Below, piece after piece: positions 1 to 60,706 of a stretch of 64,000 bases of DNA. The position numbers and the translations under genes are program-made. The stretch lies in the IMG/VR virus record IMGVR_UViG_3300050132_000038, positions 62,001 to 126,000 of that record; one strand, 5' to 3'. Positions within the stretch are counted from its first letter, which is position 1; each line of letters begins with the position of its first letter. The notes under the pieces are model-generated. The model saw only the letters and a list, made by a program, of their open reading frames with translations, searched no databases and had not been told where the DNA came from.

Positions 1-9
1 CTATTTACA

Positions 10-417
10 TTAGTGCTGAATAGGAGTGGTCAGCGGAAGTGTTAATGTAATTGATTGACGGAAGACTGGACGCACATAAATGTCCTCACCACGTTCAAGC
101 ACACCATCGACGTGATAACCATTGCAGTACCACACGCCTCTAATCGGATCGCAGCTAACGTCTACAACACGAGGCCAGATCGTGCCTGCACTAGATTGCA
201 GTGGAAGATAACCAGGGACGTGATACAGGCCATCGGCAACAGGAGTTGCTGAGGAGTAACCGATAGTCTGTCCAAGGCTCGGCACACCAGAACCCATCGG
301 CACGTTAGCTACCAGGATGGATGGTGGATCGCCTGGAGGCATTCCACCATTGGTGAGTTCTTGTGCTTGCGCACTGAAGGCTACACCAAGCAGTGCTACT
401 AGTAAGAGTTGCTTCAT
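10..417 (-). CDS. Exported protein (Sec signal peptide, two Cys)
   Basis: N-terminus MKQLLLVALLGVAFSAQA is a classic signal peptide; mature part contains YHVPGY...IWPRVVDVSC...CNGY. Confidence 0.75.
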   Translation of the reverse strand: MKQLLLVALLGVAFSAQAQELTNGGMPPGDPPSILVANVPMGSGVPSLGQTIGYSSATPVADGLYHVPGYLPLQSSAGTIWPRVVDVSCDPIRGVWYCNGYHVDGVLERGEDIYVRPVFRQSITLTLPLTTPIQH

Positions 418-426
418 CGTTGCTCC

Positions 427-600
427 CTACTCCGTAGTTGAGTCCTTAGATGCATCGGCCTCTACACTAAGCTTGGCAACCAGTGCATCAACCTGATCCT
501 GCGTTGCGTGACCTTCTGCACGCGCTTCATCAGCCCGGTCCAGCCACTTTGCGTCTTCATTACCTCCGCTCGGGTCTTCATTACTATTATTTTCAGACAT
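427..600 (-). CDS. Small acidic hypothetical protein
   Basis: Packed ORF, start taken at MSENNS; no motif recognised. Confidence 0.6.
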   Translation of the reverse strand: MSENNSNEDPSGGNEDAKWLDRADEARAEGHATQDQVDALVAKLSVEADASKDSTTE

Positions 601-629
601 GATTAGTTCCTTTATGAGTTTATTCAAAA

Positions 630-1328
630 TTACTTGGTAACAGACTGCGCACGCATTTCCGCATTGGCTTTGATGATAGCGGCGTGTGCTTGAATTTCTT
701 CGGCGGTCTTCATCTGCGGCGTTACCGTCATCAGCACACCCTTCGAGTCCAACAAAGCGAGAGGGCGTTGAACAACGGCTGCTGCTACGGGTGCCGGAGT
801 AACGACCGAGCCAGGAGCAACTGCTTGGCCGGTATCAGGATCAATTAGAGGACGACCGGCTGCAACCCACTCGGCCTTCGTCATTGGGCAACCACGGCGA
901 ATGGTGGCCCCATCTTTGCGACGATCAATAACACCACCCGACACAGAGATCGAATAGCGAATGTCGTCATTGGTACAGAGAAGGGCCATTGCTGCGGAGT
1001 GCTCGCCCATGTTCCATTCTTCACGCGCGTTCTTCAACATCGTGCAATTGGAATCTGTCCAGGTCGAACCAAGGGCTACACCGAACGACATACCGGTCGC
1101 ACCCATCGACGAACTACCCATACACGTATCATTTGAAGAGGTGAGCGAGGGAGCGAATGCCGAGGAGGTTGCGTAGCGAACGGTACTATCAGAAACAGGG
1201 GCGAACAACAGGGAACCACCTTGTGCTGCACTCTGCGTACTTGCATTCGATGCCGTGCTTGCAGTCTGTGCAAAGGCTACAGCTGACGATAGAGAAAGTA
1301 CAGTTGCTACTAGGAGCTTCTTATTCAT
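630..1328 (-). CDS. Exported Cys-containing protein
   Basis: Signal peptide MNKKLLVATVLSLSSAVAFA; core TCMGSSSMG...DSNCTMLKNAREEWNMG...ALLC. Confidence 0.75.
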   Translation of the reverse strand: MNKKLLVATVLSLSSAVAFAQTASTASNASTQSAAQGGSLLFAPVSDSTVRYATSSAFAPSLTSSNDTCMGSSSMGATGMSFGVALGSTWTDSNCTMLKNAREEWNMGEHSAAMALLCTNDDIRYSISVSGGVIDRRKDGATIRRGCPMTKAEWVAAGRPLIDPDTGQAVAPGSVVTPAPVAAAVVQRPLALLDSKGVLMTVTPQMKTAEEIQAHAAIIKANAEMRAQSVTK

Positions 1329-1362
1329 GTTTTCGTCCAATTAAGGAGGGCAAATGTGAAAA

Positions 1363-1396
1363 GAGGTGGATAGGGAACTTAATCCCTATCCACCTC
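1363..1396 (-). terminator. Rho-independent terminator after 1432..2175
   Basis: 14-bp inverted repeat gaggtggataggga/tccctatccacctc followed by TTTT on the - strand. Confidence 0.8.
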
Positions 1397-1431
1397 AGTC
1401 TAGCTAGATGTTACGTGTGAAGCTTTGTTGA

Positions 1432-2325: not shown

Positions 2326-2333
2326 TATTTACA
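2326..2333 (-). promoter_or_regulatory. TGTAAATA putative late promoter upstream of the exported-protein operon
   Basis: Exact motif in intergenic DNA on the coding strand. Confidence 0.6.
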
Positions 2334-2435: not shown

Positions 2436-2443
2436 TATTTACA
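2436..2443 (-). promoter_or_regulatory. TGTAAATA motif directly upstream of tRNA-Gln
   Basis: Exact motif 13 nt before tRNA position 1 and right after the stop of 2444..2704. Confidence 0.65.
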
Positions 2444-2859: not shown

Positions 2860-2908
2860 CCTTATTCCTTATTTGAAGGTCTAGCAAAAGTAGGAATCTA
2901 CTCTTTAT

Positions 2909-3310
2909 TTACAGTTGAGCCTCAGAAAACTTTTTACGGAACTCCAGGGGCTTCGAGATACCCAGGAACGGCTCTTGGGGATTACCAGCACCTGCCACAA
3001 CCACCGAACCGTAATTCAAGATGCGACCCATGAAGGTTTGATCCACGCGAATCGTTTCAACTTTTGACAACGGGATCTCGATCACTCTACGACTGATAAA
3101 ACCTTTCTTCGACACCAACCGCTTGTTTGTAATCACCAACTCAGTTGTGGCAAAGTTGCAGAACACCAGCAATAGCAAGATCAAGCCGATACCAAACACT
3201 GGAATAAGGATGATGCCGAGGACGATCATCCAGAAGGAATTCCACAAACTAAGTGATGCGGTGTAGACAACGTGCTCGCCTTGCGTGAGTGTCTTTTCAG
3301 TGTACGTCAT
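2909..3310 (-). CDS. Membrane protein with bacterial PH domain (YdbS/bPH_2-like)
   Basis: TM hairpin followed by ELVITNKRLVSKKGFISRRVIEIPLSKVETIRVDQTFMGRILNYGSVVV. Confidence 0.8.
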   Translation of the reverse strand: MTYTEKTLTQGEHVVYTASLSLWNSFWMIVLGIILIPVFGIGLILLLLVFCNFATTELVITNKRLVSKKGFISRRVIEIPLSKVETIRVDQTFMGRILNYGSVVVAGAGNPQEPFLGISKPLEFRKKFSEAQL

Positions 3311-3319
3311 GTTCTTTAT

Positions 3320-3610
3320 TTACAGGGGGTAATCAGGTGCAGCTGCAAGTATGGCACGGTAAGCAGCTTCCATACTACTGTATCGTCCAGTATGTTCCGC
3401 CTGTTCACAGTGAACACCTGCGATAACCATCTTGTCTGTAGGCTCCAGAGGTACCAACTTCCATCCGGCTAACAGAGCTTGATGCGCACGCCAGAATCGC
3501 TGCAGCACGGCACGTTCAGTAGGACAACCGTCGGCTTCTTTACATACACTGTCGGCACTCTCTGCATCACACGATACACAAGCCTTCGGGAACTCGACAA
3601 CATTGCTCAT
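3320..3610 (-). CDS. Hypothetical phage protein
   Basis: WKLVPLEPTDKMVIAG...AYRAILAAAP phage-type C-terminus. Confidence 0.7.
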   Translation of the reverse strand: MSNVVEFPKACVSCDAESADSVCKEADGCPTERAVLQRFWRAHQALLAGWKLVPLEPTDKMVIAGVHCEQAEHTGRYSSMEAAYRAILAAAPDYPL

Positions 3611-3645
3611 CTTACGTCCTTGTTGGTAATACGCATACAGGTTAT

Positions 3646-3867
3646 TTACAGTAGGTTTCCGTTTTCATCGTAGGTGGCGACTATGCCGCGGGTATCCCAC
3701 TTTATCTTTGCTTGCTGATCCCTAGCTACTTGGTGTTTGACGTGATCTTCAGCGTCACCCCTATAGAAGAACGGTTTACTGCAGGTACACCAGAAGAAGA
3801 ACTCGCGTCGCTGTACTACATGATACCCGTCTGCTCTACGCTTAATTCGATACTTTGGTTTGTTCAT
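3646..3867 (-). CDS. Hypothetical protein
   Basis: Start taken at MNKPKY; no motif recognised. Confidence 0.6.
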   Translation of the reverse strand: MNKPKYRIKRRADGYHVVQRREFFFWCTCSKPFFYRGDAEDHVKHQVARDQQAKIKWDTRGIVATYDENGNLL

Positions 3868-4153
3868 AGTTTGCGGTGATTGGACATACGTGGAGAGGGC
3901 ACACAATACGCAGCCACGACTTCTCAATCTTATACTCGAAGGTTGAACTCTCGTTGAATAACTCGTGCTCCTGCCCACTTGCATGAAGCATCCGCATACT
4001 ATTTACAGTGAGTGCAAGTGTCTCAGGGGTGTGCGGTTGAGTAGATAATTCATACAGCACTTCCTTCACCGTTGGGTTCGAGTCAAACCTCAACGTGAAG
4101 TGCTGGGTGCGTACTGGCGTTACCATCACCACATAGTATACATGCTGCTCCAT
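3842..4153 (-). CDS. Hypothetical protein
   Basis: Packed ORF on local coding strand. Confidence 0.6.
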   Translation of the reverse strand: MEQHVYYVVMVTPVRTQHFTLRFDSNPTVKEVLYELSTQPHTPETLALTVNSMRMLHASGQEHELFNESSTFEYKIEKSWLRIVCPLHVCPITANYEQTKVSN

Positions 4154-4564: not shown

Positions 4565-5524
4565 TTATACTAACTCTGTGCGGAGCTTCTCGAACAGGTT
4601 TTGAACTTGCGTCTCAGTAAAGCTAAAGTATTTTGAAGCCTTGCGTAAGTATCGTGGATAGGAAATCTCCTCTATCAAACTTGAGTTATCGACCTCTAAG
4701 TAATCCGAAAACCCTTCGTCGTGGTGCCCTGCACAACACATTAAAAATCGTTGAACGTCCTCACGCATACCCTTCTTCTCTGCCAGGGATACCAAGGTCT
4801 CCAACTTGTCTTTGAGGTCACGCTGCGGTTCATCGTCAACCGCTACGTGTGCCAGTGTGTCGTATGCAACATGGCGAGCTTCAAACAATCCCTCTGCCGT
4901 CTTTTGCAATCTATTGCGAGACGGTGCCGTGTAATACTGAATCTGATTCTGCCCGCAGTTGTGAATCGCAGACTTCGCTACGTTGGTTACGTGAAGCAGC
5001 GATTCAAAACGAGGATACGTTACATAGATGGCTCGCATCGCCCACGTGGTCATCTCTGTTTCCAGAAGCGACCGTTCAATGCCATAGGACCGAATCAGGA
5101 ACAGCAAACACTTTGAAATGTATTTACCAATGTACTGAGACATTGCCTGGCAGTTCAACGTGTCACCAACGATTGCGTCCAGGTCGTCAGGGGTCCACGC
5201 GTCAAACTTGATACTCAGGTGCTTCAGGTTCAGCTTCGATAGCAAACGATAATCGGAGGAGGCGATGCCATACGCTTTATACTTCGGTGCCTCTGTGTTG
5301 TAGTGCCGTGCTTTATGCACAGCCCACGCATACGTCTTGCAGTTCTTGAGAACGTAACCATCCTTGCGAATGGAGTGCAACACCTTATCTGAAATCTCAC
5401 GGTCGTCGATGAAGTGAACGAGTTGGATCTGAGTGATACGGTGAAACAGGTAGGCGAATACTGCACCGCCTACCTTGAGCACAGTCTTCTGATCTAGGTT
5501 CCAAAGTTTCGACAGTGAAGTCAT
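4565..5524 (-). CDS. Hypothetical protein, possibly a divergent sigma-factor-like protein
   Basis: 319-aa helical ORF; central segment loosely resembles sigma region 2 (function confidence low). Confidence 0.75.
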   Translation of the reverse strand: MTSLSKLWNLDQKTVLKVGGAVFAYLFHRITQIQLVHFIDDREISDKVLHSIRKDGYVLKNCKTYAWAVHKARHYNTEAPKYKAYGIASSDYRLLSKLNLKHLSIKFDAWTPDDLDAIVGDTLNCQAMSQYIGKYISKCLLFLIRSYGIERSLLETEMTTWAMRAIYVTYPRFESLLHVTNVAKSAIHNCGQNQIQYYTAPSRNRLQKTAEGLFEARHVAYDTLAHVAVDDEPQRDLKDKLETLVSLAEKKGMREDVQRFLMCCAGHHDEGFSDYLEVDNSSLIEEISYPRYLRKASKYFSFTETQVQNLFEKLRTELV

Positions 5525-5527: not shown

Positions 5528-6205
5528 TTACCTCCCCTTGATAGTGAACTCAAGCGGATCAGTCTTGCGCCGCGTCTTCTTTTCTTCTTTGTTGTACCAG
5601 TCAGAGGGGACTGAGTCGATGCTCGGTGGTTCATAGTTATCGACGACCGATGCCTTCTTGATAATCTTGTTCTGTGGATCGAATATCAATCCAGCCTCAG
5701 TCAGCTCTGCTTTCTTTTTCTTCCACTCCGAGAACACCATAAGGTCTTCACTGGAAGTGAGAAACGATGTGAACCGTGATCCCCTGGTTTTCATACTGGG
5801 TGAACCAATCAACATCAGCTCACCACTGCTGGTATACCCTGCTGAATACGCTGCCAAGTAATTCGAGATGTAATCGCGACCAACACGGAAGAACAACTTG
5901 GTGCCAATCGGAAACTTCTTTTTCTTCTGACCACGAAACATGCCTAAGAGAATTCGACGCTGCTTGTGCGTCGTGCTTTGGAACAGTGCTGCGATTTGAA
6001 CAAACTGATCGGTGTTCGTTGCCAATGCCGTGATGTCAGGTGTGAAGCACTTTGGTGCTAAACCAACTGCTCGTACTCCTTCCGCTGAACAAACTGCCTC
6101 TCGGGTTGAATGAGCATGATGACGGAAATGGAGGCACTCGCCACAGCGAAACGCCTCATCCAAAGATTTAGCACTAGCTGTGCCGAGCACGTTCTTTTTC
6201 AACAT
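5528..6205 (-). CDS. Hypothetical protein with N-terminal Cys cluster
   Basis: CGECLHF...VC...KCF. Confidence 0.75.
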   Translation of the reverse strand: MLKKNVLGTASAKSLDEAFRCGECLHFRHHAHSTREAVCSAEGVRAVGLAPKCFTPDITALATNTDQFVQIAALFQSTTHKQRRILLGMFRGQKKKKFPIGTKLFFRVGRDYISNYLAAYSAGYTSSGELMLIGSPSMKTRGSRFTSFLTSSEDLMVFSEWKKKKAELTEAGLIFDPQNKIIKKASVVDNYEPPSIDSVPSDWYNKEEKKTRRKTDPLEFTIKGR

Positions 6206-6306
6206 ATTGGGATAGGGTTTTCTATAATTCTAGTTGATGGAAATTTCGTTATTCCGTCAGTAGCGTGAGTCCGTTCACGCTAGGTTCTCCGTTGTGCCGA
6301 CACCTT

Positions 6307-6336
6307 ATTATCGCATGAAAATGGGGGTCATGTCAA
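6307..6336 (-). promoter_or_regulatory. Sigma70-like promoter
   Basis: TTGACA-18 nt-GATAAT with extended -10 TG. Confidence 0.7.
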
Positions 6337-6359
6337 TACCCCCACTTTTCGGGGTATTG
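6334..6359. terminator. Hairpin overlapping the -35 box
   Basis: caatacccc/ggggtattg 9-bp inverted repeat. Confidence 0.5.
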
Positions 6360-6366
6360 CACAGAA

Positions 6367-9939: not shown

Positions 9940-10416
9940 TTACGGAATCAGGAAGTCGTCATTGCCAGCCTTTGCCTTCTTCACCGGCTTTGCTGCAACC
10001 TTCGCTTTACCTGCCTTAGCAGCCGGTTTTGCTTTCGGGCCTTTGGCGGTTGCTGCCTTGACCGGTGCCTTGCCAGCCTTGGCTGCTTTCGCCACAACCT
10101 TACCAGCCTTTGCGACCTTGCCTACAACCTTCTTCGTTTTGGCCGGTGCTTCGTCGGCTGCTGCGGCCTTCGCTTTCGGACCCTTCGTTGCCTTCACTGC
10201 CTTGGCGGTAGCGCCGGCCTTTGCTTTCTGCGTGCGAGGTGCCTTAGCGACCTTCCCTGCTGCCTTCGCTTCCTTTGCGGCTTCAATGCGAGCTTGTGCG
10301 CGCTCCAGTTGCGTCGTCAATCGTGCAATCGTGCGGTCGCCAGTTGCGATCATCTTTGCTGCGGCCTTCAATGCGGTTGCGATTTGTTTGGCTTGGGAGA
10401 TTTGTGCGGTTGCCAT
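9940..10416 (-). CDS. Histone H1-like Lys/Ala-rich DNA-binding protein
   Basis: Repetitive KAAKAGKAPVKAATAKGPKAKPAAK composition. Confidence 0.8.
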   Translation of the reverse strand: MATAQISQAKQIATALKAAAKMIATGDRTIARLTTQLERAQARIEAAKEAKAAGKVAKAPRTQKAKAGATAKAVKATKGPKAKAAAADEAPAKTKKVVGKVAKAGKVVAKAAKAGKAPVKAATAKGPKAKPAAKAGKAKVAAKPVKKAKAGNDDFLIP

Positions 10417-10465
10417 TTTATGTGTTTCCTTTGTTTCAGTTTGGGAGGGTTAAGACTACAGGTTA

Positions 10466-10494
10466 ATTGTATCACACTTTTTATGTTTGTGAAA
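10466..10494 (-). promoter_or_regulatory. Sigma70-like promoter for the histone-like gene
   Basis: TTTCAC-17 nt-TACAAT with extended -10; a TGTAAATA also lies at 10514-10521. Confidence 0.6.
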
Positions 10495-10561
10495 TACAAA
10501 TTACTACATTGTATATTTACAACAGTTTGCGAAAAACTTTACTACATTTTGAATAGTTAAA

Positions 10562-10585
10562 TTGGGAGTTGGTTAAAACTCCCAA
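10562..10585 (-). terminator. Hairpin terminator
   Basis: ttgggagtt/aactcccaa stem 8 nt after the stop of 10594..11670. Confidence 0.65.
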
Positions 10586-10593
10586 CCAGGGAA

Positions 10594-12395: not shown

Positions 12396-12440
12396 TTGAT
12401 TTCCTTTTCGTTGGGATTTTCTATCCTTCACCTACACCCT

Positions 12441-12469
12441 ATTGTAACACGTTTTCCCAGTCTGTGCAA
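12441..12469 (-). promoter_or_regulatory. Sigma70-like (early) promoter
   Basis: TTGCAC-17 nt-TACAAT with AT-rich upstream region. Confidence 0.75.
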
Positions 12470-12538
12470 ATTATTTTCAATTATTTTGTTGTATTTTCAC
12501 GACACCTGGGTTTGCCTAAATTTTTTTGTGCAAACTAC

Positions 12539-13735: not shown

Positions 13736-13736
13736 C

Positions 13737-13874
13737 TCAGTCCTCGTTACGATTCTTATGTTTGCCGTACCCTTGCTTCTGCAAGTGCTTGCGATTGGCA
13801 AACCTAGAGCATCGGTTAATCTTCAACCCATATCTTGCTACTGGGTTACGAACCGAAGTCCGTACCTTAGTCAT
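13737..13874 (-). CDS. 45-aa basic peptide (not in ORF track)
   Basis: MTKVRTSVRNPVARYGLKINRCSRFANRKHLQKQGYGKHKNRNED fills the gap exactly between flanking genes. Confidence 0.65.
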   Translation of the reverse strand: MTKVRTSVRNPVARYGLKINRCSRFANRKHLQKQGYGKHKNRNED

Positions 13875-20331: not shown

Positions 20332-20470
20332 GTTTGATAACTTCCTAGGATGTTGGAAAAATTCCAGTGTTGCGCGAGCACCGGAAACTCGTTTACTTAT
20401 ACAACGTATTTACAAGAGAACTTTAAAAGTGAAAATGCTGAACTACGTATTGCATATTTACAGTCTGAAT

Positions 20471-21277: not shown

Positions 21278-21405
21278 TTGATGCTCCGGGTTTGGTGAGT
21301 CTTGAAATTGGGTGTGTGGCTCTTTGCTGCATATCAGTGAAGCTACCTACTCGATGAATCTAAATTCCCCTTGCTGCCACTTATATTGAATTCGTATTTA
21401 CAGGG

Positions 21406-23274: not shown

Positions 23275-23331
23275 TTTCGTGTGTTCCTTATATCATTGAA
23301 AATTTAAATTGTGAAACTTGTATTTACAGTG

Positions 23332-29841: not shown

Positions 29842-30083
29842 CGCCTACTCCGTTGGTGGGGTATATGCTATATTTACAGGAATTCGCATATCGCATTTTT
29901 AATGTGTAAGAGGAATTCACACATTCCACAATTTTACACAAATCCAAAACACAGGATTTATCTTTAGACTGACAGATAGCCATAGAATTATAGAACAAGG
30001 CTCTGTTACGTATCTTAGCCTCGGGACTAGCCGGATTGATAGCTGTATTGATCTCTCCTAAACTAGTTAAAGAGGAACTCAAA

Positions 30084-39686: not shown

Positions 39687-40022
39687 TTATTCCTCCGAGA
39701 CGTAACTGATTTTCGTTTGAACCCATTCCGAAGTCTTCATCGGAACTGCCTTACCCAACTTTGCAAATATCGCCTGCACCTTCGTGGCGTCAATATCCTT
39801 GCGAGTACGATGTGAGAATTCCAATTGCATGAGATACCCTTCATCGCCGTTGAACTGGAAATTTTCATTTGCTGATTTCGCCGCCAGAAAGTCTGTCAGC
39901 GATTCTTCCTCGGCCTTCAATGCTTTGAGCTTCTCGCGCAACTCAGCGAGCTCTTGTTTAACTCCGTTCAAGCGGTTGGCGTACTCGCGAGGTTTTTTAC
40001 TATTTACAAATTTATACGACAT
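39687..40022 (-). CDS. Hypothetical coiled-coil protein
   Basis: ORF with RBS. Confidence 0.7.
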   Translation of the reverse strand: MSYKFVNSKKPREYANRLNGVKQELAELREKLKALKAEEESLTDFLAAKSANENFQFNGDEGYLMQLEFSHRTRKDIDATKVQAIFAKLGKAVPMKTSEWVQTKISYVSEE

Positions 40023-40649: not shown

Positions 40650-40699
40650 TTTCTATTCTCCGTTTTCTATCGGTTTTCTATCTTGTGCCTCTACACCTC

Positions 40700-40728: not shown

Positions 40729-40981
40729 CAATTTTGTTGCAAATAACACGAATCTGCCTAAATTTTGTGCAGCGTTTAAGCCTTTTTGACCCTCTTTTAA
40801 CCATTTTCCGTGATTCATGGGTATTTCATCAAAAGCCTGTATTTTGGCCCGCCAGAGGGTGCCTACGACGCTGTAGCCTACCTGCAATGGAAGGTTTCCC
40901 TGATATGAATTTAGCCCATGAAATGCAAAGAGCCCCGCACCGATCATTTAAGACCAGAGCAGGGCTCGCTTGAAACTTGAA

Positions 40982-43230: not shown

Positions 43231-43482
43231 TCACGAGTCTTGTAGCTCGTGTTTGATCTTGAATGCTAAACTATTGCGTAAGATATTTACAACAGCAGAA
43301 TCAATTGGTGGTAGACCTACTAAGGCTGCGAACTCAACTGGGGTAAAGTCTGAGTTTGCGAATACCTCACTATATTTACAGAGGCCGTTGACGCGGTGCT
43401 TCCACATACACTGAGAAGTCTCCAGTGGGCACTCTGCTACCGATAACTGTTTGTGGATGATAATGCAGTAGGCAGTCATCAC
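43231..43482 (-). CDS. Cys-rich hypothetical protein
   Basis: YCII...ECP...CMWKH...LCKY. Confidence 0.65.
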   Translation of the reverse strand: MMTAYCIIIHKQLSVAECPLETSQCMWKHRVNGLCKYSEVFANSDFTPVEFAALVGLPPIDSAVVNILRNSLAFKIKHELQDS

Positions 43483-46659: not shown

Positions 46660-46937
46660 TTTAGTTTCTTCTCCTCGTTCAACATCTCTGCCATGATCTC
46701 CTGCTTCGTACTGAGGAAATCTTGCATCGCCACGTTCCGGTCTGCATGGTGTTTCGCCCAGATGTCCTCCACCTGGTACATACGGAAGTCCTCAGGAGCA
46801 CGGAAGAACACGCTATACATTGATCTATGTGGGACGTGGGTGATAGAGATAACTGTTGCGCCTTCGTCCTCAACTATGTTGGCGAGGATTGCGGCGTCGT
46901 GTGTATCACTCGCAAACATCAAGTGTATCTTACTCAT
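46656..46937 (-). CDS. Hypothetical protein
   Basis: TGTAAATA at 46958-46965, 20 nt upstream of the ATG. Confidence 0.65.
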   Translation of the reverse strand: MSKIHLMFASDTHDAAILANIVEDEGATVISITHVPHRSMYSVFFRAPEDFRMYQVEDIWAKHHADRNVAMQDFLSTKQEIMAEMLNEEKKLK

Positions 46938-47070
46938 GGCTTCTCCGGTAACTAAGTTATTTACAGTGAATCCAGGAACATCTGGCCTATGTCTTCCAGT
47001 GAGGGCATAGTGGGCTGTGCGTCGGATTCTTGTAGAGCTTGTGCCTCATCTTCAGTTAGGATATTGTCCA

Positions 47071-49776: not shown

Positions 49777-50112
49777 TTAAACATTGGAGTCCTTTAGCTG
49801 TTGAACTGCTTGGTCTATAACCGAATCCATATCTAAATCGATCAAAGGTTGTTTCTTCGGATCTAAGATAACTTCAGTGTCAGAGTCTTCGTGGAGGAAC
49901 CCTGCGATCTCTGCGTTTCTCTCTGCTTGCCTGAATGTCTGAAGGGGAACCATCGCCATTAGAGCCAGACTAGTTTGCAGAAAGTTATGCAGGCGATCTA
50001 TATCTTGTTCGTCTACAAGTCCTCGTCGAACGTTGTTCAAAGTTCGTATAGTGTTCTTACGGTAGAGACCTATGATGTGATCTTTACCTCGTGAATCTTT
50101 CTTTGTGCTCAT
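49777..50112 (-). CDS. Hypothetical protein
   Basis: TGTAAATA upstream at 50148-50155. Confidence 0.7.
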   Translation of the reverse strand: MSTKKDSRGKDHIIGLYRKNTIRTLNNVRRGLVDEQDIDRLHNFLQTSLALMAMVPLQTFRQAERNAEIAGFLHEDSDTEVILDPKKQPLIDLDMDSVIDQAVQQLKDSNV

Positions 50113-50146: not shown

Positions 50147-50656
50147 TTATTTACAAGGGTACTCTTCACCGTAGTCCTCATCGTCACCGAACGGATCATC
50201 TGTAGGTTCACCGATGGAGAGTACCTTGATAAACCTGTAGCCTTTGGGATCATCAACTAGCGTGAGCGTATACACTGCGTAATGCACTTTCGGGTACACA
50301 GTGTCCTGGTAGGGTTGGACTTGTACAGCTTGAACCTTATAGAGCTCTCCGTTACACAGCTTAAACATAGAGGGGTAGAAGTATGGATCCTGCTCGAAGC
50401 ACTCCAGGCCGGTTATTGTTGAATCCTCGTAGAATAAAGTACACATGAGCTTCTGTGAGAACCCTGAGGCTGGGTTCGTACGGGTGAAGCGGGCGTGCAC
50501 TGGGTATTGAGCACCACCAGTAGGTAACTTTGATTTGACCTCGGGCTCAGGGTTAATCCAGGACTTCAAGATCTGAATCTGCTCCTTGGCAAGCTTTACT
50601 TTGTTCCACGAGGCTTCAGCGACTACCATGTTGAAGTCTTCGTCGATGATTATCAT
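50147..50656 (-). CDS. Hypothetical protein
   Basis: Packed ORF. Confidence 0.7.
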   Translation of the reverse strand: MIIIDEDFNMVVAEASWNKVKLAKEQIQILKSWINPEPEVKSKLPTGGAQYPVHARFTRTNPASGFSQKLMCTLFYEDSTITGLECFEQDPYFYPSMFKLCNGELYKVQAVQVQPYQDTVYPKVHYAVYTLTLVDDPKGYRFIKVLSIGEPTDDPFGDDEDYGEEYPCK

Positions 50657-50660: not shown

Positions 50661-51617
50661 TTACTCCTTGGTTAGAGTTGGTTGGCAGTAAGCAATTTCT
50701 AAGAAGGCTGCCAAGGACGCCGCGGTCGCCCTAAGTTCTTGCTGTCGCTCTTTAGACTGTCCCGCTAGTATTCGAATCCGTTTTATATTAGGTGCTGAAA
50801 ACGGTTTAACTTTAAATGGGGCCTCGACCTGTAAGGCAATTGCGGTCATAGGGACCTGCTCTAAGTCATCCATGCTATAAATTTTGTGAAGGTAGCCGCT
50901 ATTCTTCTTAGCGGCCCTCTCTACTTTTTCTACAGTAACGATGGCAGGTTTAACTTTCTTAATGACCCGGGACAGGTGCCCCTCAGAGGTTACTTGAGAA
51001 TAGCCGAGCAGATTACATTTCTCGATCTTCCATAGCTCATCTGACTTGTAGTTTATGTAGTGGAAAGCGGGATCAGAATTATTTGCCAGTGTGCCCGCGT
51101 AGAAGGTGTTTCTAAATCGTAATTCTCTGTGCAGGTGTCCAGCTACAGTAACAGCATCACTCTTCTTCATTCCTACCTTAAAGTCCAAGCCTAACTTCTT
51201 TTCAACTTCGGGGACAGCAGCGTGGACTACATTCAGAGCATCGAACATTAGTCGCGCATGAGGCCACGGATTAAAGTTTACGTGAGCTCCGTCTATGTCT
51301 ACCACTTCGGCCCTAGAACTGAAGACGGTAACGTTATGAGCTCTGAGCAGATCTAGGCTACAGGAGGATGCTTCCCGATTGTTAAAGAGATCATGATTAC
51401 CAGCGATGATCCAGAAGCGTAGGTCATTGTACTCGGCAAATAGTTTTCGTAGCTTGCGGACAACGGTAAGGTCACCATCCTCTACAAGGTCCCCGTACTG
51501 AAAGATATTTTGTATCCTCCTCTTTCTCGCAATGTCACAGACGTGAGAAATCCTGAACAGGCGCGATTTCATGTTGGTAGGTTCGAGATGCAGATCTGCT
51601 ATCCCTAGTGCTCTCAT
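50661..51617 (-). CDS. Second SbcD/Mre11-like metallophosphoesterase
   Basis: ADLHL, YGDLVE, AGNHD, AGHLH, YAGTL. Confidence 0.75.
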   Translation of the reverse strand: MRALGIADLHLEPTNMKSRLFRISHVCDIARKRRIQNIFQYGDLVEDGDLTVVRKLRKLFAEYNDLRFWIIAGNHDLFNNREASSCSLDLLRAHNVTVFSSRAEVVDIDGAHVNFNPWPHARLMFDALNVVHAAVPEVEKKLGLDFKVGMKKSDAVTVAGHLHRELRFRNTFYAGTLANNSDPAFHYINYKSDELWKIEKCNLLGYSQVTSEGHLSRVIKKVKPAIVTVEKVERAAKKNSGYLHKIYSMDDLEQVPMTAIALQVEAPFKVKPFSAPNIKRIRILAGQSKERQQELRATAASLAAFLEIAYCQPTLTKE

Positions 51618-52921
51618 TTCGTTTGGTCCACGTAAGTAGGTTTAGAGAAGTCGAGCTTCAGTGTGGCAGCGGCCTGGGCTAATCTCTTCGACTCCCGCGT
51701 TTTAGTCAAGATACCTGATAGCTCTTCCAAGTATAACGCCGCCCCCTTCGCAGATGATAACCACCGCTTAGTATGATCCTTCGTATTGGTCAACAGCCCT
51801 GCCTGCCCCTGCAGCATAATCAGATGCGCGTCAGGTGAAATGTCTAAACTTAGGTTCAATGATTCCGCCCACGTTACTAACCGAGGATCCCACGCAACCT
51901 TCTTCTTCCCTGCGTTAGTCTTGTACTCCTCTTCCCATAGCTTCATCATCCCTCGATGCTGTAGAGCAAATGGATTGTCTACAGTCACCATGTAGGATAA
52001 GCACGTACGCTCTATAGCATAGGTCATCAACGCTTCCACCGCACCTTTCCAGCCACGCTCAGGATACTCCCGCTTCACGTAGTCATACAAACCTTTGATA
52101 GTAGGCTTGGCCCCTAAACTCCAATAGTTCTTTAGATAGTAGTTACTCACAGTAAGATCGAACCGCAATCGTTTCTCCAGGTCCTGCTCCTCTTCACTAC
52201 CCATTGCCTTCTCGTTATCACGCTTCTCCTGTGCTTTATTATAAAGACACAGATGCATTAGCTTGTTACCCTTCCCTAACTTATCGCCTTTAGCATAGAT
52301 CGCCAAGGCTATTGAATCATCGTACTGATCCCCTACGCTACGCTTCATAGCTAATTCTTGCAACAGTGATATGTAACGTTCTCCGGTGTGCAGCCGCGTC
52401 TCATACATAAAATACCAACGATCAATCAATTCTCTCATTAGCTTTTCATTCTTCAATGGTGAACTATACTGCGCGAACGTTACTGAATGAATGTTGATAT
52501 TCCCAATCTTTACCTGCTGCGTTAGCCGGGTAACGTCTACACCCTTCTTACCCAGGAACTCTAGTACAAAGTAGAATATATCCTGCACCTGTGTCCGTAG
52601 CTTCAAGTTACCGAACGTATTGTCCCCACTGAACACTGATGCTGGATTAGCTAACACATTGAAGAACCATGTGGATCCTGCACGACCATCCTGTCGTAGT
52701 GTTACTGTTATTGCTGAACCTAGCTTCTTGAACTTCCCTGGGTTCATAATGAATATGATTCCCCCATCCTTATCGCGCAGTCCTCCATTCTTTTCCATTA
52801 CAGCCATTAGCTTCTTACTTTCCTTATCAGAGCATTCAACACCATTACTCTCGAAGGTCGTATCATCAACATCTAGGTCTGTTCCCATATTGATATTGTC
52901 CACCATTGCGTATGTCTTCAT
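51614..52921 (-). CDS. Rep_trans / phage gene II-X-like replication initiator homolog
   Basis: ANPASVFSGDNTFG, LCLYNKAQEKRDN (resembles the catalytic IYNKKQERKDN of pT181-family Rep), LRFDLTV. Confidence 0.65.
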   Translation of the reverse strand: MKTYAMVDNINMGTDLDVDDTTFESNGVECSDKESKKLMAVMEKNGGLRDKDGGIIFIMNPGKFKKLGSAITVTLRQDGRAGSTWFFNVLANPASVFSGDNTFGNLKLRTQVQDIFYFVLEFLGKKGVDVTRLTQQVKIGNINIHSVTFAQYSSPLKNEKLMRELIDRWYFMYETRLHTGERYISLLQELAMKRSVGDQYDDSIALAIYAKGDKLGKGNKLMHLCLYNKAQEKRDNEKAMGSEEEQDLEKRLRFDLTVSNYYLKNYWSLGAKPTIKGLYDYVKREYPERGWKGAVEALMTYAIERTCLSYMVTVDNPFALQHRGMMKLWEEEYKTNAGKKKVAWDPRLVTWAESLNLSLDISPDAHLIMLQGQAGLLTNTKDHTKRWLSSAKGAALYLEELSGILTKTRESKRLAQAAATLKLDFSKPTYVDQTK

Positions 52922-52950
52922 TGCCCTATCCCTTACCTTGATCTATGAAT

Positions 52951-53121
52951 CTACACATACCTAAACTATGTGTAGTCTATTTACATGCGTATTCGTTACC
53001 TGCGTATTCACCCTGAGTTAAACTATGTGTAACTATTCATGCAATTAATACACTTACTCATATATATTGATATTGTTATATTATACCCAAACTCAGGGTT
53101 ACTCATAGTTAAACTATGTGT
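52951..53121. repeat. Iteron-like direct repeats, inverted repeats and AT-rich core at the strand switch
   Basis: TAAACTATGTGT at 52962, 53019, 53110; ccctgagtt/aactcaggg at 53011 and 53090; ctacacata/tatgtgtag hairpin at 52951-52975. Confidence 0.8.
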
Positions 53122-53222
53122 GAGATACCCATATCGAGATGACGTATCATTTAACGAAAATGAAATTGTAGGGTGTGGATTCCTGCGTACCTATAGTTTG
53201 GATATAAGTAAAAAAATCTACC

Positions 53223-53230
53223 TGTAAATA
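53223..53230 (+). promoter_or_regulatory. TGTAAATA promoter starting the + strand block
   Basis: Exact motif 28 nt before the ATG; its divergent partner is at 52978-52985 on the - strand. Confidence 0.65.
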
Positions 53231-53258
53231 ACTAGTGTTCAACGTGGAGACTTATACA

Positions 53259-53576
53259 ATGACTGATGAAGAAGCGTACCGAGGATGGTTAGCTCGCAAG
53301 AACGGAGTAGCAGCTACAGCACACGAGGCTTTCCTCGCAGGGGTCAAACGTTACAAGGAGTTGTGGCTTCGAGAGCAAGAACTCAACTTACAGATGGAAG
53401 CTGAACTTCAGAGCGGTAGTCTGCCCTCTAGTCGTTACACCTTCGATCCTCATAATGTATTCGATCAATGGTTGATCCGCAACTTCAAGACTGGTGACAT
53501 TACCTCACGAGAACATAACCTGATGTTTAGCGTGTGGTACGCTCTCAAATCTGATAAGGAGAATCACAATGATTGA
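53259..53576 (+). CDS. Hypothetical protein
   Basis: Start MTDEEA with RBS GGAG. Confidence 0.7.
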   Translation: MTDEEAYRGWLARKNGVAATAHEAFLAGVKRYKELWLREQELNLQMEAELQSGSLPSSRYTFDPHNVFDQWLIRNFKTGDITSREHNLMFSVWYALKSDKENHND

Positions 53577-58442: not shown

Positions 58443-58450
58443 TGTAAATA
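58443..58450 (+). promoter_or_regulatory. TGTAAATA putative late promoter
   Basis: Directly after a stop codon, 18 nt before the ATG at 58469. Confidence 0.65.
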
Positions 58451-58468
58451 AAAGGAAAGGGGAAACTA

Positions 58469-58699
58469 ATGAAAGTATGGTTGAGTGACGAACTAAGTGC
58501 CCGAGCGAAGGCCGCTGGTGTTCAAGACACGCTGAATCTGTACATAGGTCTAGAGTTTACTTTAGAACTTCTACTGGAGATCATACAGAATCCAAAGATG
58601 CCTACCGTCGTACCTACGATAATCCGTAAATACACTCTAGACGCACCGCCTGCAGCAACTATAGGTGACATACTTCTATGTCATGTTCATGAATGGTGA
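58469..58699 (+). CDS. Hypothetical protein
   Basis: ORF after the promoter motif. Confidence 0.6.
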   Translation: MKVWLSDELSARAKAAGVQDTLNLYIGLEFTLELLLEIIQNPKMPTVVPTIIRKYTLDAPPAATIGDILLCHVHEW

Positions 58700-58805
58700 T
58701 TGCAGGTAGGCTACGATAGCGTACGACCTATCCTACGGCCTGAAAATAGGGGTTATGCACAATTACCCACAAACCGGATAATATACCTAAAGAAGAGGTT
58801 TTCTA

Positions 58806-59516
58806 ATGTCAGATCTAGCAACTGTAGTTCACGAAATTCCAAAAGATTTAACTGACCTGTACGCAGTGTTAAATGTTCCACGGGATGCCACTGTTCAGGA
58901 AATTAAAGCAGCGTACCGTTTGGCTGCTATGCTGTATCATCCAGATAGGCAGAATGGTAGCTCAGAATTATTCCAAGCAGTTCAGCGGGCGTACGAAGTG
59001 TTGATGGACCCTAAGAAGCGTAAGCATTACGACGAAACTGGAAGGCTGCCCATCGACGACGAGAAGCTCAGGGAAGAAGCGTTGTCCGTTGTGAACTTCA
59101 ACCTGATCCAGGTGATCGACCAGATTGCACAATCCCCTGATCCTACTATGGAAGTGTGGCGTGTCAATCCGGTAGCTTCGGTGAAGTCTAAACTCAGCCA
59201 AGAACTTGTTAACGCTCGACAGAACCTACTGGGTATCCACAAAGCAATCAGACGCTACAAAGCAATGCTGAAGCGGTTCAAGAACAAGAAAGCTGAGAGC
59301 TTCGAGAACTCTCCTGTTGGTTTCCTAATGAATGAGAAGCTGACCAATCTCGAAGACACCATCGAGAAGGTGGAGAATATAATTAAGATTCATGAGTACG
59401 CAGTCGAGCTGTGTGACGACTACAACTACGATCAAGCCGACGATACACCTCCACCGCAGCCCCAGTCCTATCAGGATCTGCAAACCATTTTCTTTAATAC
59501 GTGGCCTACCCGGTAG
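58806..59516 (+). CDS. DnaJ-domain protein
   Basis: DLYAVLNVPRDATVQEIKAAYR..AMLYHPDR...LFQAVQRAYEVLMDPKKRKHYD. Confidence 0.9.
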   Translation: MSDLATVVHEIPKDLTDLYAVLNVPRDATVQEIKAAYRLAAMLYHPDRQNGSSELFQAVQRAYEVLMDPKKRKHYDETGRLPIDDEKLREEALSVVNFNLIQVIDQIAQSPDPTMEVWRVNPVASVKSKLSQELVNARQNLLGIHKAIRRYKAMLKRFKNKKAESFENSPVGFLMNEKLTNLEDTIEKVENIIKIHEYAVELCDDYNYDQADDTPPPQPQSYQDLQTIFFNTWPTR

Positions 59517-59533
59517 CCCAAGGAGAATTGCAA

Positions 59534-60403
59534 ATGAAAGTCCAACGATACTTACAGATTGGTAGTGCAATGTGCCCTGCCGTAGACTCAGGTAGCTGGG
59601 TGTCAGCTTTTGACTACGATGCCTTGGCCTCAAAGCTAGAGCAGTACAAAGATCTGTGTGCAGCACTGTACCAGATGGCAGGACTTGTAGGAGCCCCGGT
59701 ACGTTTCCTAGACGCACTACACGATGCAGCCTCTGGTGAGATTTTAGTTAATCCTATTGACGCACTGCTTCCTACTACGATAGAGGAGTACACTGATCCT
59801 CGTGGTTGTGTCACAGCCTCCTATAACGAGGAAGGTTGTATCGTAGCAGTTACAAGACAAGATGAAGAAGGGAAGATCCTATCGGTCATCGCAGAGACTC
59901 ACACTGAGTGGAAGAGCGCTACACATTATACAATCCACGAGGTAGTTGTACACCCTGGCAATCTCCCCTGGATGCCTTCGCCTGACTATCCTGTAGATCC
60001 GTCACCTAATCACCCAGGTGCGCAGTTTCACATTGAAACTAACGTAGCAGACTTACAGAAGTGTCAGCGGTACTACTTAGATCCTGCTTTTAAAGAACAA
60101 GTTGAGGCACACACGCATATTGGTTCCAACTTCGATGAAGTTCTAAAGGAAGACGGGATACTGGAAGAAGTAACGGCTAAAGCTCAGGCACGAGTCGAAG
60201 CACTAAATAAAGGTTTATATCTAGGGAAGACCATATGCTACTCCGTGCCTACTGAGAAAGGAGACCGTTGGGTTCTAGGTAGCGTCCCCGGACGAGAATG
60301 GGAGTTCTTCTCCGACGCAGTGGCTTGGGGCAACGCTAACGGCTACCTAGTGGAGATGGAGAGCTCATTACCTAAGGAACATAGAGATGACGCAGCGGAT
60401 TAA
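59534..60403 (+). CDS. Mosaic hypothetical phage protein
   Basis: VQRY...GSWVSAFDYDAL N-terminus typical of Ead/Ea22-like proteins. Confidence 0.7.
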   Translation: MKVQRYLQIGSAMCPAVDSGSWVSAFDYDALASKLEQYKDLCAALYQMAGLVGAPVRFLDALHDAASGEILVNPIDALLPTTIEEYTDPRGCVTASYNEEGCIVAVTRQDEEGKILSVIAETHTEWKSATHYTIHEVVVHPGNLPWMPSPDYPVDPSPNHPGAQFHIETNVADLQKCQRYYLDPAFKEQVEAHTHIGSNFDEVLKEDGILEEVTAKAQARVEALNKGLYLGKTICYSVPTEKGDRWVLGSVPGREWEFFSDAVAWGNANGYLVEMESSLPKEHRDDAAD

Positions 60404-60611
60404 ATTTACTGAAGCAGAGATCAAGGCGTTATCAGAATCACCCACTGCCCTCAAAGCATTGGCCTACTGGCACGAGGTACAAGCAACTATCGGAGAAGCT
60501 TCGGGCTTCTCTTGCACAGCTAATGACGAGCGGAGTCAGCAGTTACTCGCTGAATCCCGACGTCTGTATAATCGCTATGATAATGGTGACGATCCAGGGT
60601 TCACCGAGTAA
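60387..60611 (+). CDS. Hypothetical protein
   Basis: Packed ORF. Confidence 0.6.
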   Translation: MTQRIKFTEAEIKALSESPTALKALAYWHEVQATIGEASGFSCTANDERSQQLLAESRRLYNRYDNGDDPGFTE

Positions 60612-60698
60612 CACGTAGTAGAGAATAGCAGCAGAGCACTAGAAGAGGATTACTATAACAACTAGCCTTACTGAGTATGCCCTTTAGAATTAATGAAC

Positions 60699-60706
60699 TA
60701 TAAATA
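60699..60706 (+). promoter_or_regulatory. TATAAATA (T4 late consensus) variant promoter
   Basis: Intergenic, 17 nt before the ATG at 60724. Confidence 0.55.

What the first reader, a model, noticed from the sequence alone, without database searches (positions are those of the whole stretch)
2..60706. Strand-biased TGTAAATA motif: a T4-late-like phage promoter
Seen: by eye I found 21 exact copies. On the - strand at 2, 2326, 2436, 2906, 3317, 3643, 4000, 10514, 20407, 20455, 21395, 23321, 29871, 40001, 43284, 43373, 46958, 50148, 52978; on the + strand at 53223 and 58443. All lie on the locally transcribed strand, most at gene boundaries, and the orientation flips at the strand switch. A rough expectation is only 2-3 copies by chance. 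Established: the T4 late promoter is TATAAATA with no -35 box, read by gp55 sigma; an exact TATAAATA occurs intergenically at 60699. Inference: a phage sigma factor with one-base-shifted specificity.
Basis: partly seen in the sequence, partly recalled or inferred. Interest (0 to 1): 0.65.

Follow-up and report, generated by a model that had tools for sequence, protein, structure and literature searches.

The report
Phage middle-gene promoter TGTAAATA, not late
The repeated 8-mer TGTAAATA is real and is almost certainly this giant phage's own promoter, but it heads DNA-replication and accessory genes rather than the late virion genes, and its core GTAAATA is shared by the whole phiRSL1-like phage family.

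Summary
Observation confirmed. There are 21 exact TGTAAATA in the window against about 2 expected. The complete 218,861-bp phage genome, from peat metagenomes and related to phiRSL1, has 45 copies. All 45 lie on the transcribed strand, and 28 are intergenic. Most sit 18-60 nt before a start codon. Copies also sit at the heads of divergent gene blocks and 13 nt before a tRNA.

There is no -35 box. One-mismatch variants, including T4's TATAAATA, are not enriched.

Relatives carry the same core GTAAATA at orthologous positions. The base in front differs by lineage: T only here and in four contigs of close kin, A or C elsewhere.

"Late" is not supported. The motif precedes DNA polymerase, helicases, SSB, the topoisomerase II operon and many small genes. 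It precedes 0 of 63 genes in the virion-gene regions, where a different motif, CAATTTCAT, is found.

No gp55 or gp45 homolog was detected. The phage does encode two divergent sigma-like proteins. One lies in the window (4565-5524) behind a host-type promoter. The other lies behind a TGTAAATA.

Best reading: a -10-only middle-class promoter in a sigma cascade. Which sigma reads it is inferred, not shown. No RNA data exist.

The parts
2..9 (-). TGTAAATA site; next start lies 49 nt downstream, just left of the window
2326..2333 (-). TGTAAATA site just after the tRNA-Gln 3' end; 150 nt before ORF 1432-2175
2436..2443 (-). TGTAAATA site 13 nt upstream of the mature 5' end of tRNA-Gln (2348-2422)
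2906..2913 (-). TGTAAATA site whose internal TAA is the stop of ORF 2909-3310; upstream of ORF 2444-2704
3317..3324 (-). TGTAAATA site containing the stop of ORF 3320-3610; 6 nt before ORF 2909-3310
3643..3650 (-). TGTAAATA site 32 nt before ORF 3320-3610
4000..4007 (-). TGTAAATA site 15 nt before the alternative ORF 3646-3984
10514..10521 (-). TGTAAATA site 97 nt before ORF 9940-10416, in tandem with a sigma70-type promoter; the G001 ortholog has two AGTAAATA
20407..20414 (-). TGTAAATA site, proximal of a pair heading the operon that runs into topoisomerase II (15749-18292, 14226-15740)
20455..20462 (-). TGTAAATA site, distal of the pair; the G001 ortholog also has a pair of AGTAAATA
21395..21402 (-). 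TGTAAATA site 117 nt before ORF 20471-21277
23321..23328 (-). TGTAAATA site 46 nt before ORF 22948-23274
29871..29878 (-). TGTAAATA site 29 nt before ORF 29419-29841, at the head of a - strand block (divergent junction)
40001..40008 (-). TGTAAATA site inside the first codons of ORF 39687-40022 as called; the true start is probably further downstream
43284..43291 (-). TGTAAATA site 126 nt before ORF 42438-43157; orthologs in G001 and BcepSauron carry AGTAAATA
43373..43380 (-). TGTAAATA site, second copy before ORF 42438-43157
46958..46965 (-). TGTAAATA site 20 nt before ORF 46656-46937
50148..50155 (-). TGTAAATA site 35 nt before ORF 49777-50112, overlapping the end of ORF 50147-50656
52978..52985 (-). 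TGTAAATA site 56 nt before ORF 51614-52921; leftward promoter of the main divergent junction
53223..53230 (+). TGTAAATA site 28 nt before the first + strand gene; rightward promoter of the main divergent junction
58443..58450 (+). TGTAAATA site 18 nt before ORF 58469-58699
4565..5524 (-). Gene for sigma-like protein P0121 (319 aa): sigma2-like domain at residues 109-200 plus a C-terminal helical domain. Candidate reader of the motif.
6307..6336 (-). Host-type sigma70 promoter (TTGACA, 18 nt, GATAAT) heading the operon topoisomerase-IB-like (5528-6205), then P0121, then a 105-aa ORF
   Evidence: the same operon in relative L134 has TTGACA, 18 nt, TATAAT

Best explanation
TGTAAATA is the core of a phage-specific, -35-less, -10-type promoter. 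It drives the non-structural genes of an uncultured phiRSL1-like jumbo myovirus: replication, recombination, nucleotide metabolism, DNA-modification genes, a tRNA and many small accessory genes. The hexamer TAAATA would occupy -12 to -7. Transcription would start at the purine about 7 nt after the motif. Recognition most likely needs a phage-encoded specificity factor bound to host core RNA polymerase. Two divergent sigma-like proteins are encoded. P0121 (window 4565-5524) lies behind a host-type sigma70 promoter. P0001 (genome 149339-150307) lies behind a TGTAAATA. The simplest cascade has three steps. Host sigma70 promoters make P0121. P0121 then reads nGTAAATA, the middle class, which includes the P0001 operon. 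P0001 finally reads the distinct CAATTTCAT motif in front of virion genes. Shown here: the motif statistics, geometry, gene classes, family-wide and positional conservation, and the sigma-like folds. Inferred: that transcription starts there, the timing, and which sigma reads which motif. My split is about 0.45 for P0121, 0.25 for P0001 and 0.3 for something else.
For: Enrichment and total strand bias.
Position before starts, with 28 of 45 intergenic.
Motif present at 5 of the 8 heads of gene blocks whose upstream neighbour is on the other strand, where no co-directional upstream gene could supply a transcript.
nGTAAATA lies 6-22 nt before five tRNA genes in four genomes, so it is not a translation signal.
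Flat flanks apart from C at -1 and T,A 6-7 nt downstream, with no -35 and no repeat element.
Strict 8-mer, with variants not enriched.
Core GTAAATA is enriched and co-oriented in G001, G002, G007, G010, RSL1 and BcepSauron.
Orthologs of motif-preceded genes keep a GTAAATA within 200 nt: 12 of 19 against 10 of 101 (p 2e-6), 6 of 16 against 6 of 98, and 6 of 14 against 6 of 94.
Downstream genes are DNA polymerase, DnaB-like and other helicases, SSB, exonuclease, NMN adenylyltransferase-like and the topoisomerase II operon.
The motif precedes 0 of 63 genes in virion-gene regions against 33 of 257 others (p 8e-4).
P0001 fold: residues 3-254 align to sigma70 residues 95-451, Z 14.8, and all top-50 Foldseek hits are sigma70 chains.
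P0121 fold: the unbiased search puts sigma factors in ranks 1-13, with Z up to 9.1 and rmsd 2.5 A over 83 residues, and T4 gp55 at Z 7.1.
P0121 sits behind a consensus-like host promoter here and in a relative.
P0001 sits 453 nt behind a TGTAAATA.
Against: There is no transcript data. The genome is known only from peat metagenome DNA runs.
Neither sigma-like protein reaches a Pfam threshold. P0001 scores 16-18 bits against a cut-off of 24, and P0121 scores nothing.
The P0121 Z-scores of 7-9 are in the range that helical domains can reach by chance.
P0001's predicted DNA-reading helix is identical in lineages that use T and lineages that use A.
The T-lineage-specific residues of P0121 are not statistically concentrated in its sigma2 domain.
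Only about five host-type promoters were found. The early class is therefore thin, and unaided host reading of TGTAAATA is not excluded.
In RSL1 and BcepSauron the exclusion from virion-gene orthologs is not significant.
Confidence: 0.7

Rival explanations
1. One reading: a T4-type late promoter, read by a gp55-like sigma with gp33 and the sliding clamp, driving virion genes.
For: 7 of 8 bases match TATAAATA. There is no -35. The inferred start-site spacing is similar. P0121's sigma2-like domain superposes on T4 gp55 at Z 7.1.
Against: The motif precedes 0 of 63 genes in virion-gene regions and sits before replication genes instead. No match was found to T4 gp55, phrog_234, phrog_12791 or the gp45 clamp family phrog_223. 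hhalign of the P0001 family against gp55 gives probability 0.2. TATAAATA is not enriched.
Confidence: 0.05
2. An early promoter read directly by the unknown host's own RNA polymerase holoenzyme, with no phage factor.
For: It is by far the commonest promoter-like signal, and it precedes many small genes of the host-takeover type. Very few canonical sigma70 promoters exist.
Against: It has A rather than T at the -7 position, has no -35, and its TG is out of register for an extended -10. The same core is used by relatives of 38-58% G+C that infect Ralstonia and Burkholderia, whose housekeeping promoters are canonical. The phage's own host-type promoters look quite different: TTGACA-like plus TGnTAnAAT.
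Confidence: 0.12
3. An RNA-level signal, such as a processing, cleavage or stability site at cistron boundaries, rather than a start site.
For: It lies at gene boundaries, often touching the upstream stop codon, inside long co-directional gene arrays. Terminators precede it rarely, at 3 of 45 sites.
Against: It stands at the heads of divergent blocks, where no upstream co-directional gene exists. It sits 6-22 nt before tRNA genes. There is a purine preference 7 nt downstream. It is absent from the equally compact virion operons.
Confidence: 0.06
4. A DNA-level, non-transcriptional polar signal, such as a Chi-like, replication, packaging or base-modification site.
For: The strand polarity flips at one main point near genome position 115.1 kb, which carries iteron-like repeats. 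The genome encodes 7-deazaguanine synthesis genes.
Against: Orientation follows local gene direction even in small embedded blocks: the + sites at 190082 and 196921 head + blocks among - blocks. Intergenic enrichment is about 5.5-fold, with fixed spacing to starts. The sites are conserved before orthologous genes.
Confidence: 0.03

Closest known systems
T4 late promoter TATAAATA with gp55, gp33 and the gp45 clamp
   Same: Both are strict AT-rich 8-mers at the -10 position with no -35, present in tens of copies and strand-locked. The motif here differs from T4's at one base. The phage encodes sigma2-type proteins.
   Different: The motif drives replication and accessory genes, not virion genes. 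No gp55 or gp45 homologs were detected. The family-wide core is GTAAATA with a variable base in front. TATAAATA itself is not used.
Bacillus phage SPO1 sigma cascade (gp28 for middle genes, gp33/34 for late genes; from my own knowledge)
   Same: The layout is the same. A phage sigma gene sits behind a host-type promoter. A phage-specific promoter class sits before replication genes. A second sigma gene sits inside that class. A third, distinct motif sits before virion genes.
   Different: SPO1 middle and late promoters have two elements (-35 and -10), while both motifs here are single elements. The proteins are unrelated in sequence. Nothing has been tested biochemically.
T4 middle promoters (MotA box plus sigma70 appropriated by AsiA; from my own knowledge)
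   Same: Both serve the same gene class: replication and nucleotide metabolism.
   Different: The MotA box lies at -30 and needs a sigma70 -10 element. Here the motif lies too close to start codons (18-30 nt) to be at -30, and no downstream -10 element is conserved.
Sigma factors reported in RNAP-lacking jumbo phages (PMC13282480, PMC7824862; Matilda preprint 10.64898/2026.10.21.760668)
   Same: These sources state that such phages encode conserved sigma homologs presumed to redirect host RNAP to phage promoters. Matilda, a relative, is said to encode an additional sigma factor.
   Different: None of these sources gives a promoter motif for the phiRSL1/Sarumanvirus group. The word 'promoter' does not occur in the Matilda text. 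Text searches for TGTAAATA, AGTAAATA and GTAAATA found nothing relevant.

Membership tests
T4-type late transcription system | Promoter consensus TATAAATA | tested here: not met
   TGTAAATA has 45 copies. TATAAATA has 10 copies with no positional bias.
T4-type late transcription system | No -35 element | tested here: met
   Information content is flat from -40 to -3. No dyad motif was found.
T4-type late transcription system | gp55 ortholog | tested here: not met
   No match to the T4 gp55 protein, phrog_234 or phrog_12791 in the complete genome. hhalign gives probability 0.2. The only resemblance is at fold level, between the sigma2-like domain of P0121 and gp55 (Z 7.1).
T4-type late transcription system | gp45-type sliding clamp as activator | tested here: not met
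   phrog_223 gives no match in the genome at E up to 10. A very divergent clamp cannot be excluded.
T4-type late transcription system | gp33 co-activator | not tested
   I had no family accession to hand. The small conserved genes flanking P0001 are a SWIM-finger protein and an unassignable helical protein.
T4-type late transcription system | Drives virion (late) genes | tested here: not met
   0 of 63 against 33 of 257 genes (p 8e-4). Terminase, portal, baseplate, fibre and sheath genes all lie in motif-free regions.
Sigma70 family (P0001) | Sigma region 1.2 to 2.4 fold | tested here: met
   pLDDT 82. Residues 3-254 align to sigma70 residues 95-451 with Z 14.8. The Foldseek top 50 are all sigma70 chains.
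Sigma70 family (P0001) | Pfam Sigma70_r2 above the gathering score; a region 4 | tested here: not met
   16.3-18.2 bits against a cut-off of 24. No PF04545 or PF08281 anywhere in the genome.
Sigma70 family (P0121, window 4565-5524) | Sigma2 domain fold | tested here: inconclusive
   pLDDT 85. Ranks 1-13 of an all-PDB search are sigma factors, with rmsd 2.4-3 A over 72-90 residues. However, Z is only 7-9 and the Foldseek E-value is 0.14 or worse. No Pfam or PDB sequence hit.
Canonical bacterial sigma70 promoter | A -35 hexamer, and T at -7 of the -10 hexamer | tested here: not met
   No -35. The hexamer TAAATA ends in A.
phiRSL1-like jumbo phages (Mieseafarmvirus/Sarumanvirus group) | Shared core proteins and synteny | tested here: met
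   Topoisomerase II large subunit is 63% identical to RSL1 and 56% to BcepSaruman/Sauron. 108-120 of 320 predicted proteins have hits in each of G001, RSL1 and BcepSauron, and 59 have hits in all six compared genomes.
Sigma cascade of the SPO1 type | First phage sigma gene behind a host promoter, second sigma gene behind the phage middle promoter, and a distinct late motif | tested here: met
   This holds at sequence level only. Timing and biochemistry cannot be tested with these tools.

The most novel reading that the evidence does not exclude
The phiRSL1-like jumbo phages share an undescribed single-element promoter nGTAAATA whose 5' base has switched specificity between lineages. It is T only in this phage and its close kin. 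It is A, less often C, and rarely T in most relatives. It is C in the deepest branches. The switch occurs while the sites stay in front of the same genes. If one of the two sigma-like proteins reads it, this is a natural series of near-orthogonal sigma/promoter pairs. The pair operates in a three-tier cascade whose middle tier looks like T4's late promoter.
Probability: 0.35. Interest if true: 0.65.

Novelty: new variant of a known kind. Interest (0 to 1): 0.55.

Why it matters
Jumbo phages without their own RNA polymerase are assumed to reprogram the host enzyme with phage sigma factors. For the phiRSL1/Sarumanvirus group, no promoter has been described in the literature I could search.

This work gives a concrete, testable promoter, nGTAAATA. 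It also gives a candidate late motif, a handful of host-type promoters and two candidate sigma proteins. Together these allow operon maps and temporal classes to be predicted across dozens of cultured and uncultured genomes.

The lineage-specific switch of one promoter base at conserved sites is a clean natural experiment in the co-evolution of promoter and reader. It is also a possible source of compact orthogonal promoter parts.

Tried and rejected
- Megablast of 20 kb against the phage collection found no near relative.
- The exact 8-mer was searched in relatives and at first looked absent: 0-7 copies. De novo k-mer enrichment then showed that the relatives use A/C-GTAAATA.
- A search for gapped -35/-10 dyads found nothing.
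- The tool's sigma70 scan of 44-64 kb found 28 sites against 25.6 expected, mostly on the wrong strand.
- Terminators upstream of the motif: 3 of 45 sites, so this is not a general feature.
- Profile searches of both sigma-like families against PDB sequences gave nothing useful.
- hhalign of P0001 against T4 gp55, and of P0121 against P0001, was not significant.
- Covariation between the 5' base and sigma residues: P0001's reading helix is invariant between the T and A lineages. Its only T-specific residues are L81, E88, I107, K138, Q146, I269 and M291. P0121 has T-specific W161, V179 and N193 in its sigma2-like domain, but this is no more than chance expects. The result is inconclusive.
- The proteins of the operons behind host-type promoters have no recognisable family.
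- Late-motif conservation in relatives had low statistical power.
- A search for RNA runs found only peat metagenome DNA runs.
- The original phiRSL1 paper (Virology 2010) is not held. I cannot exclude that it mentions a motif.


Full report
**The observation**

Dinucleotide-preserving shuffles give a mean of 1.98 and a maximum of 6.

The window is bases 62001-126000 of a complete 218,861-bp virus genome with direct terminal repeats and 48% G+C. The genome is known only from peat metagenomes.

Genome-wide there are 45 copies, and TGTAAATA is the second most frequent of all 8-mers. All 28 copies on the - strand lie between 22641 and 114978. All 17 on the + strand lie between 115223 and 212943.

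I called 320 genes with a crude codon-bias and RBS caller. Against these calls, all 45 copies are on the locally transcribed strand. 28 of 45 are intergenic, although only 11.3% of the genome is (p 5e-16). No copy is antisense, where about 3.4 are expected (p 0.03).

The motif typically ends 18-60 nt before the next start codon. It often abuts the previous stop codon, and in five cases its internal TAA is that stop.

**Anatomy of the motif**

- The 8-mer is strict. No single-mismatch variant exceeds 11 copies or shows positional bias, and that includes TATAAATA with 10 copies.
- The flanks carry almost no information. There is C at -1 (25 of 45), A or C at -2, and T then A at 6 and 7 nt after the motif (26 and 23 of 45). 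Nothing resembles a -35 box, and there is no extended similarity that would mark a repeat element.
- Read as a -10 element, TAAATA sits at -12 to -7 and the preferred purine at +1.
- Terminators upstream are rare, at 3 of 45 sites.

**Why a promoter and not something else**

- Eight gene blocks have an upstream neighbour on the other strand, so no co-directional upstream gene could supply a transcript. Five of them begin 21-56 nt after a TGTAAATA: window 29871, 52978 and 53223, and genome 190082 and 196921. Two others begin after the second motif described below.
- One site lies 13 nt before the mature 5' end of tRNA-Gln. In relatives, nGTAAATA lies 6-22 nt before four more tRNA genes. This excludes a translational role.
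- Orientation follows local gene direction even for small + blocks embedded among - blocks. This argues against a replication-linked or Chi-like signal.

**What the genome is**

The proteins place it with Ralstonia phage phiRSL1 and Burkholderia phages BcepSauron and BcepSaruman. The topoisomerase II large subunit is 63% and 56% identical to theirs. Between 108 and 120 of the 320 predicted proteins have hits in each of three relatives, G001, RSL1 and BcepSauron.

**Comparative evidence**

The exact 8-mer is not enriched in the relatives. De novo k-mer enrichment in their upstream regions nevertheless returns the same core:

| Genome | Main form of the motif |
|---|---|
| G001 (217.6 kb IMG/VR genome) | AGTAAATA, 30 copies |
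| G002 | AGTAAATA, 47 copies |
| BcepSauron | AGTAAATA, 21 copies |
| phiRSL1 | A/C/G-GTAAATA: 17, 10 and 6 copies |
| G007 | CGTAAATA, 37 copies |
| G010 | CGTAAATA, 12 of 14 copies upstream of genes |

All or nearly all of these copies are co-oriented with genes.

In this genome the base before GTAAATA is T in 45 copies. The 11 copies with another base show no positional bias. Four contigs of close kin also use T only: 4 of 4, 5 of 5, 3 of 3 and 7 of 7 copies. Three were reached through homologs of the sigma-like protein P0001 (introduced below) that are 77-80% identical to it. The fourth was reached through a P0121 homolog 71% identical. The contig of a more distant P0001 homolog, 71% identical, uses A, C and one T.

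The sites are also positionally conserved. Orthologs of motif-preceded genes have a GTAAATA within 200 nt upstream as follows:

| Relative | Orthologs of motif-preceded genes | Orthologs of other genes | p |
|---|---|---|---|
| G001 | 12 of 19 | 10 of 101 | 2e-6 |
| phiRSL1 | 6 of 16 | 6 of 98 | 0.002 |
| BcepSauron | 6 of 14 | 6 of 94 | 0.001 |

This is the strongest evidence that the element is functional. It also shows that only the base in front of the core has changed.

**Which genes it serves**

PHROG scans of the genes directly downstream of the motif give:
- a large helicase
- a nucleotide pyrophosphohydrolase
- an NMN-adenylyltransferase-like enzyme
- DNA polymerase
- SSB
- a Cas4-like exonuclease
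- two further helicases, one of them DnaB-like
- the operon running into both topoisomerase II subunits

The motif also precedes 7-deazaguanine synthesis genes and thyX.

Terminase, portal, tail lysozyme, baseplate wedge, tail fibre and tail sheath lie in 1.9-17.9 kb and 152.6-197 kb. In these regions no gene has a TGTAAATA within 150 nt upstream: 0 of 63 against 33 of 257 elsewhere (p 8e-4). The motif is therefore not a late promoter.

**The other two promoter classes**

- A second motif, CAATTTCAT (looser form CAATTTnA), is enriched before genes of the virion regions: 10 of 63 against 7 of 257 (p 3e-4). It heads two - strand virion-gene blocks. phiRSL1 has the related AATTTGATGG.
- Canonical sigma70 promoters are very rare. 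Five long intergenic regions in the window carry good ones of the form TTGACA-like plus TGnTAnAAT: 6206-6366, 10417-10593, 12396-12538, 26064-26703 and 40650-40981.

The sequence thus suggests three tiers of promoters.

**Possible readers of the motif**

The complete genome has no detectable gp55, no sigma region 4 and no gp45 clamp. It does encode two divergent sigma-like proteins.

P0001 (322 aa, genome 149339-150307):
- It gives a sub-threshold Sigma70_r2 hit.
- It is a core gene of the family: 276 homologs, 60% identical in BcepSauron, where it is named 'RNA polymerase'.
- Its model has pLDDT 82. Residues 3-254 superpose on sigma70 regions 1.2 to 2.4 with Z 14.8, and all 50 top Foldseek hits are sigma70 chains.
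- Its C-terminal 70 residues are unassigned.
- It lies in a conserved three-gene cassette, between a SWIM-finger protein and a small helical protein.
- It lies 453 nt behind a TGTAAATA.

P0121 (319 aa, window 4565-5524):
- It has no family hit but is conserved in all six relatives.
- Its model has pLDDT 85. Residues 109-200 match sigma2 domains. In a search of all 48,161 PDB representatives, ranks 1-13 are sigma factors (sigma28, ECF sigmas, sigma32, pro-sigmaK and a sigma70 fragment), with rmsd 2.4-3 A over 72-90 residues. T4 gp55 appears at Z 7.1.
- Some alignments run on to residue 319, as in sigma2-plus-sigma4 factors.
- The Z-scores of 7-9 are moderate, so I hold this assignment at about 0.65.
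- The gene follows a topoisomerase-IB-like gene behind TTGACA-18-GATAAT. In a T-lineage relative the same operon has TTGACA-18-TATAAT.

**Mechanism proposed**

Host holoenzyme transcribes a few operons, including P0121. A phage factor then directs core RNAP to nGTAAATA. This switches on replication, nucleotide and DNA-modification genes, the tRNA and the P0001 operon. The late motif then switches on virion genes.

The wiring, meaning which sigma gene sits behind which promoter type, favours P0121 for nGTAAATA and P0001 for the late motif, as in the SPO1 cascade.

One point argues the other way. P0001 lacks a region 4, which suits a -35-less promoter, although both phage motifs are single elements.

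Covariation between the 5' base and sigma residues does not decide between them. No RNA data exist for this phage. The Matilda preprint missed early times and reports no promoters.

**Comparison and novelty**

The element works like T4's late promoter in form: a strict, AT-rich, -10-only 8-mer differing from T4's at one base. It fails the membership tests on consensus, on gp55 and gp45, and on gene class.

In logic it is closest to the middle tier of a phage sigma cascade. Reviews state that RNAP-less jumbo phages carry sigma homologs presumed to read phage promoters (PMC13282480, PMC7824862). I found no description of this motif. The original phiRSL1 paper could not be read.

I rate it a new variant of a known kind. 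The lineage-specific base switch at conserved sites is the most interesting part.

Noticed in passing
window 53160-53167 (- strand); genome 6104, 157668, 165286, 175657, 190064, 196903, 203630, 217170 and looser copies: A second strand-locked motif, CAATTTCAT (looser form CAATTTnA), lies 20-110 nt before genes of the virion-gene regions: 10 of 63 against 7 of 257 elsewhere. It sits at the heads of two - strand virion-gene blocks. phiRSL1 has the related AATTTGATGG. It is a candidate late promoter.
   Followed up: partly
window 6206-6366, 10417-10593, 12396-12538, 26064-26703, 40650-40981 (all - strand): Five long intergenic regions carry good host-type sigma70 promoters, four of them with an extended -10 (TGnTAnAAT). 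They are a candidate early class. The regions at 12396-12538 and 40650-40981 share a similar promoter-plus-leader sequence.
   Followed up: partly
window 4565-5524 (- strand): A 319-aa core protein of the family has no sequence-family hit. Its predicted fold contains a sigma2-like domain. It would be a second phage sigma-like factor, not annotated as such anywhere I could see.
   Followed up: yes
window 52880-53300: The main divergent junction, between the two outward-facing TGTAAATA, holds three copies of a 22-nt repeat ending in TAAACTATGTGT, two tandem 14-nt repeats, and inverted repeats. These may be operators or an origin.
   Followed up: partly
genome 139530-148856 (outside the window; L087/L088) and relatives L108, L109, L132, L133: A cluster of QueD-like (PTPS), radical-SAM QueE-like, GTP cyclohydrolase I, kinase, PNKP-phosphatase and ThyX-like genes lies just upstream of the P0001 cassette. 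QueC is present in some relatives. The cluster suggests 7-deazaguanine-type DNA modification. The Matilda preprint also measured a hypermodified base.
   Followed up: partly
genome 148913-151005 (L088:2913-5005): There is a conserved three-gene cassette: a 140-aa SWIM zinc-finger protein (57-69% identical across the family), then sigma-like P0001, then a helical protein of about 121 aa. It is syntenic in every relative examined. The flanking proteins could be sigma partners.
   Followed up: partly
window 12539-13801 (-), 5528-6205 (-), 44161-45180 and 50661-51617 (-): The window also encodes an RtcB-type RNA ligase, a topoisomerase-IB-like protein and two SbcD-like nuclease genes. From my own recollection, topoisomerase IB is a virion protein in phiRSL1.
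   Followed up: no
genome 163376-163475 and 171307-171411 (outside the window): Two paralogous genes of 368 and 353 aa share phrog_5356, and one also has homing-endonuclease-like hits. Both have near-identical leaders of about 100 nt that begin with a CAATTT-type motif.
   Followed up: no
BcepSauron genome (L069-L082): A longer repeated upstream element containing TATTGTTGACGG has about 20 copies, often with TAACCCC 13-20 nt upstream. It is absent from this phage and may be that lineage's host-type early promoter.
   Followed up: no
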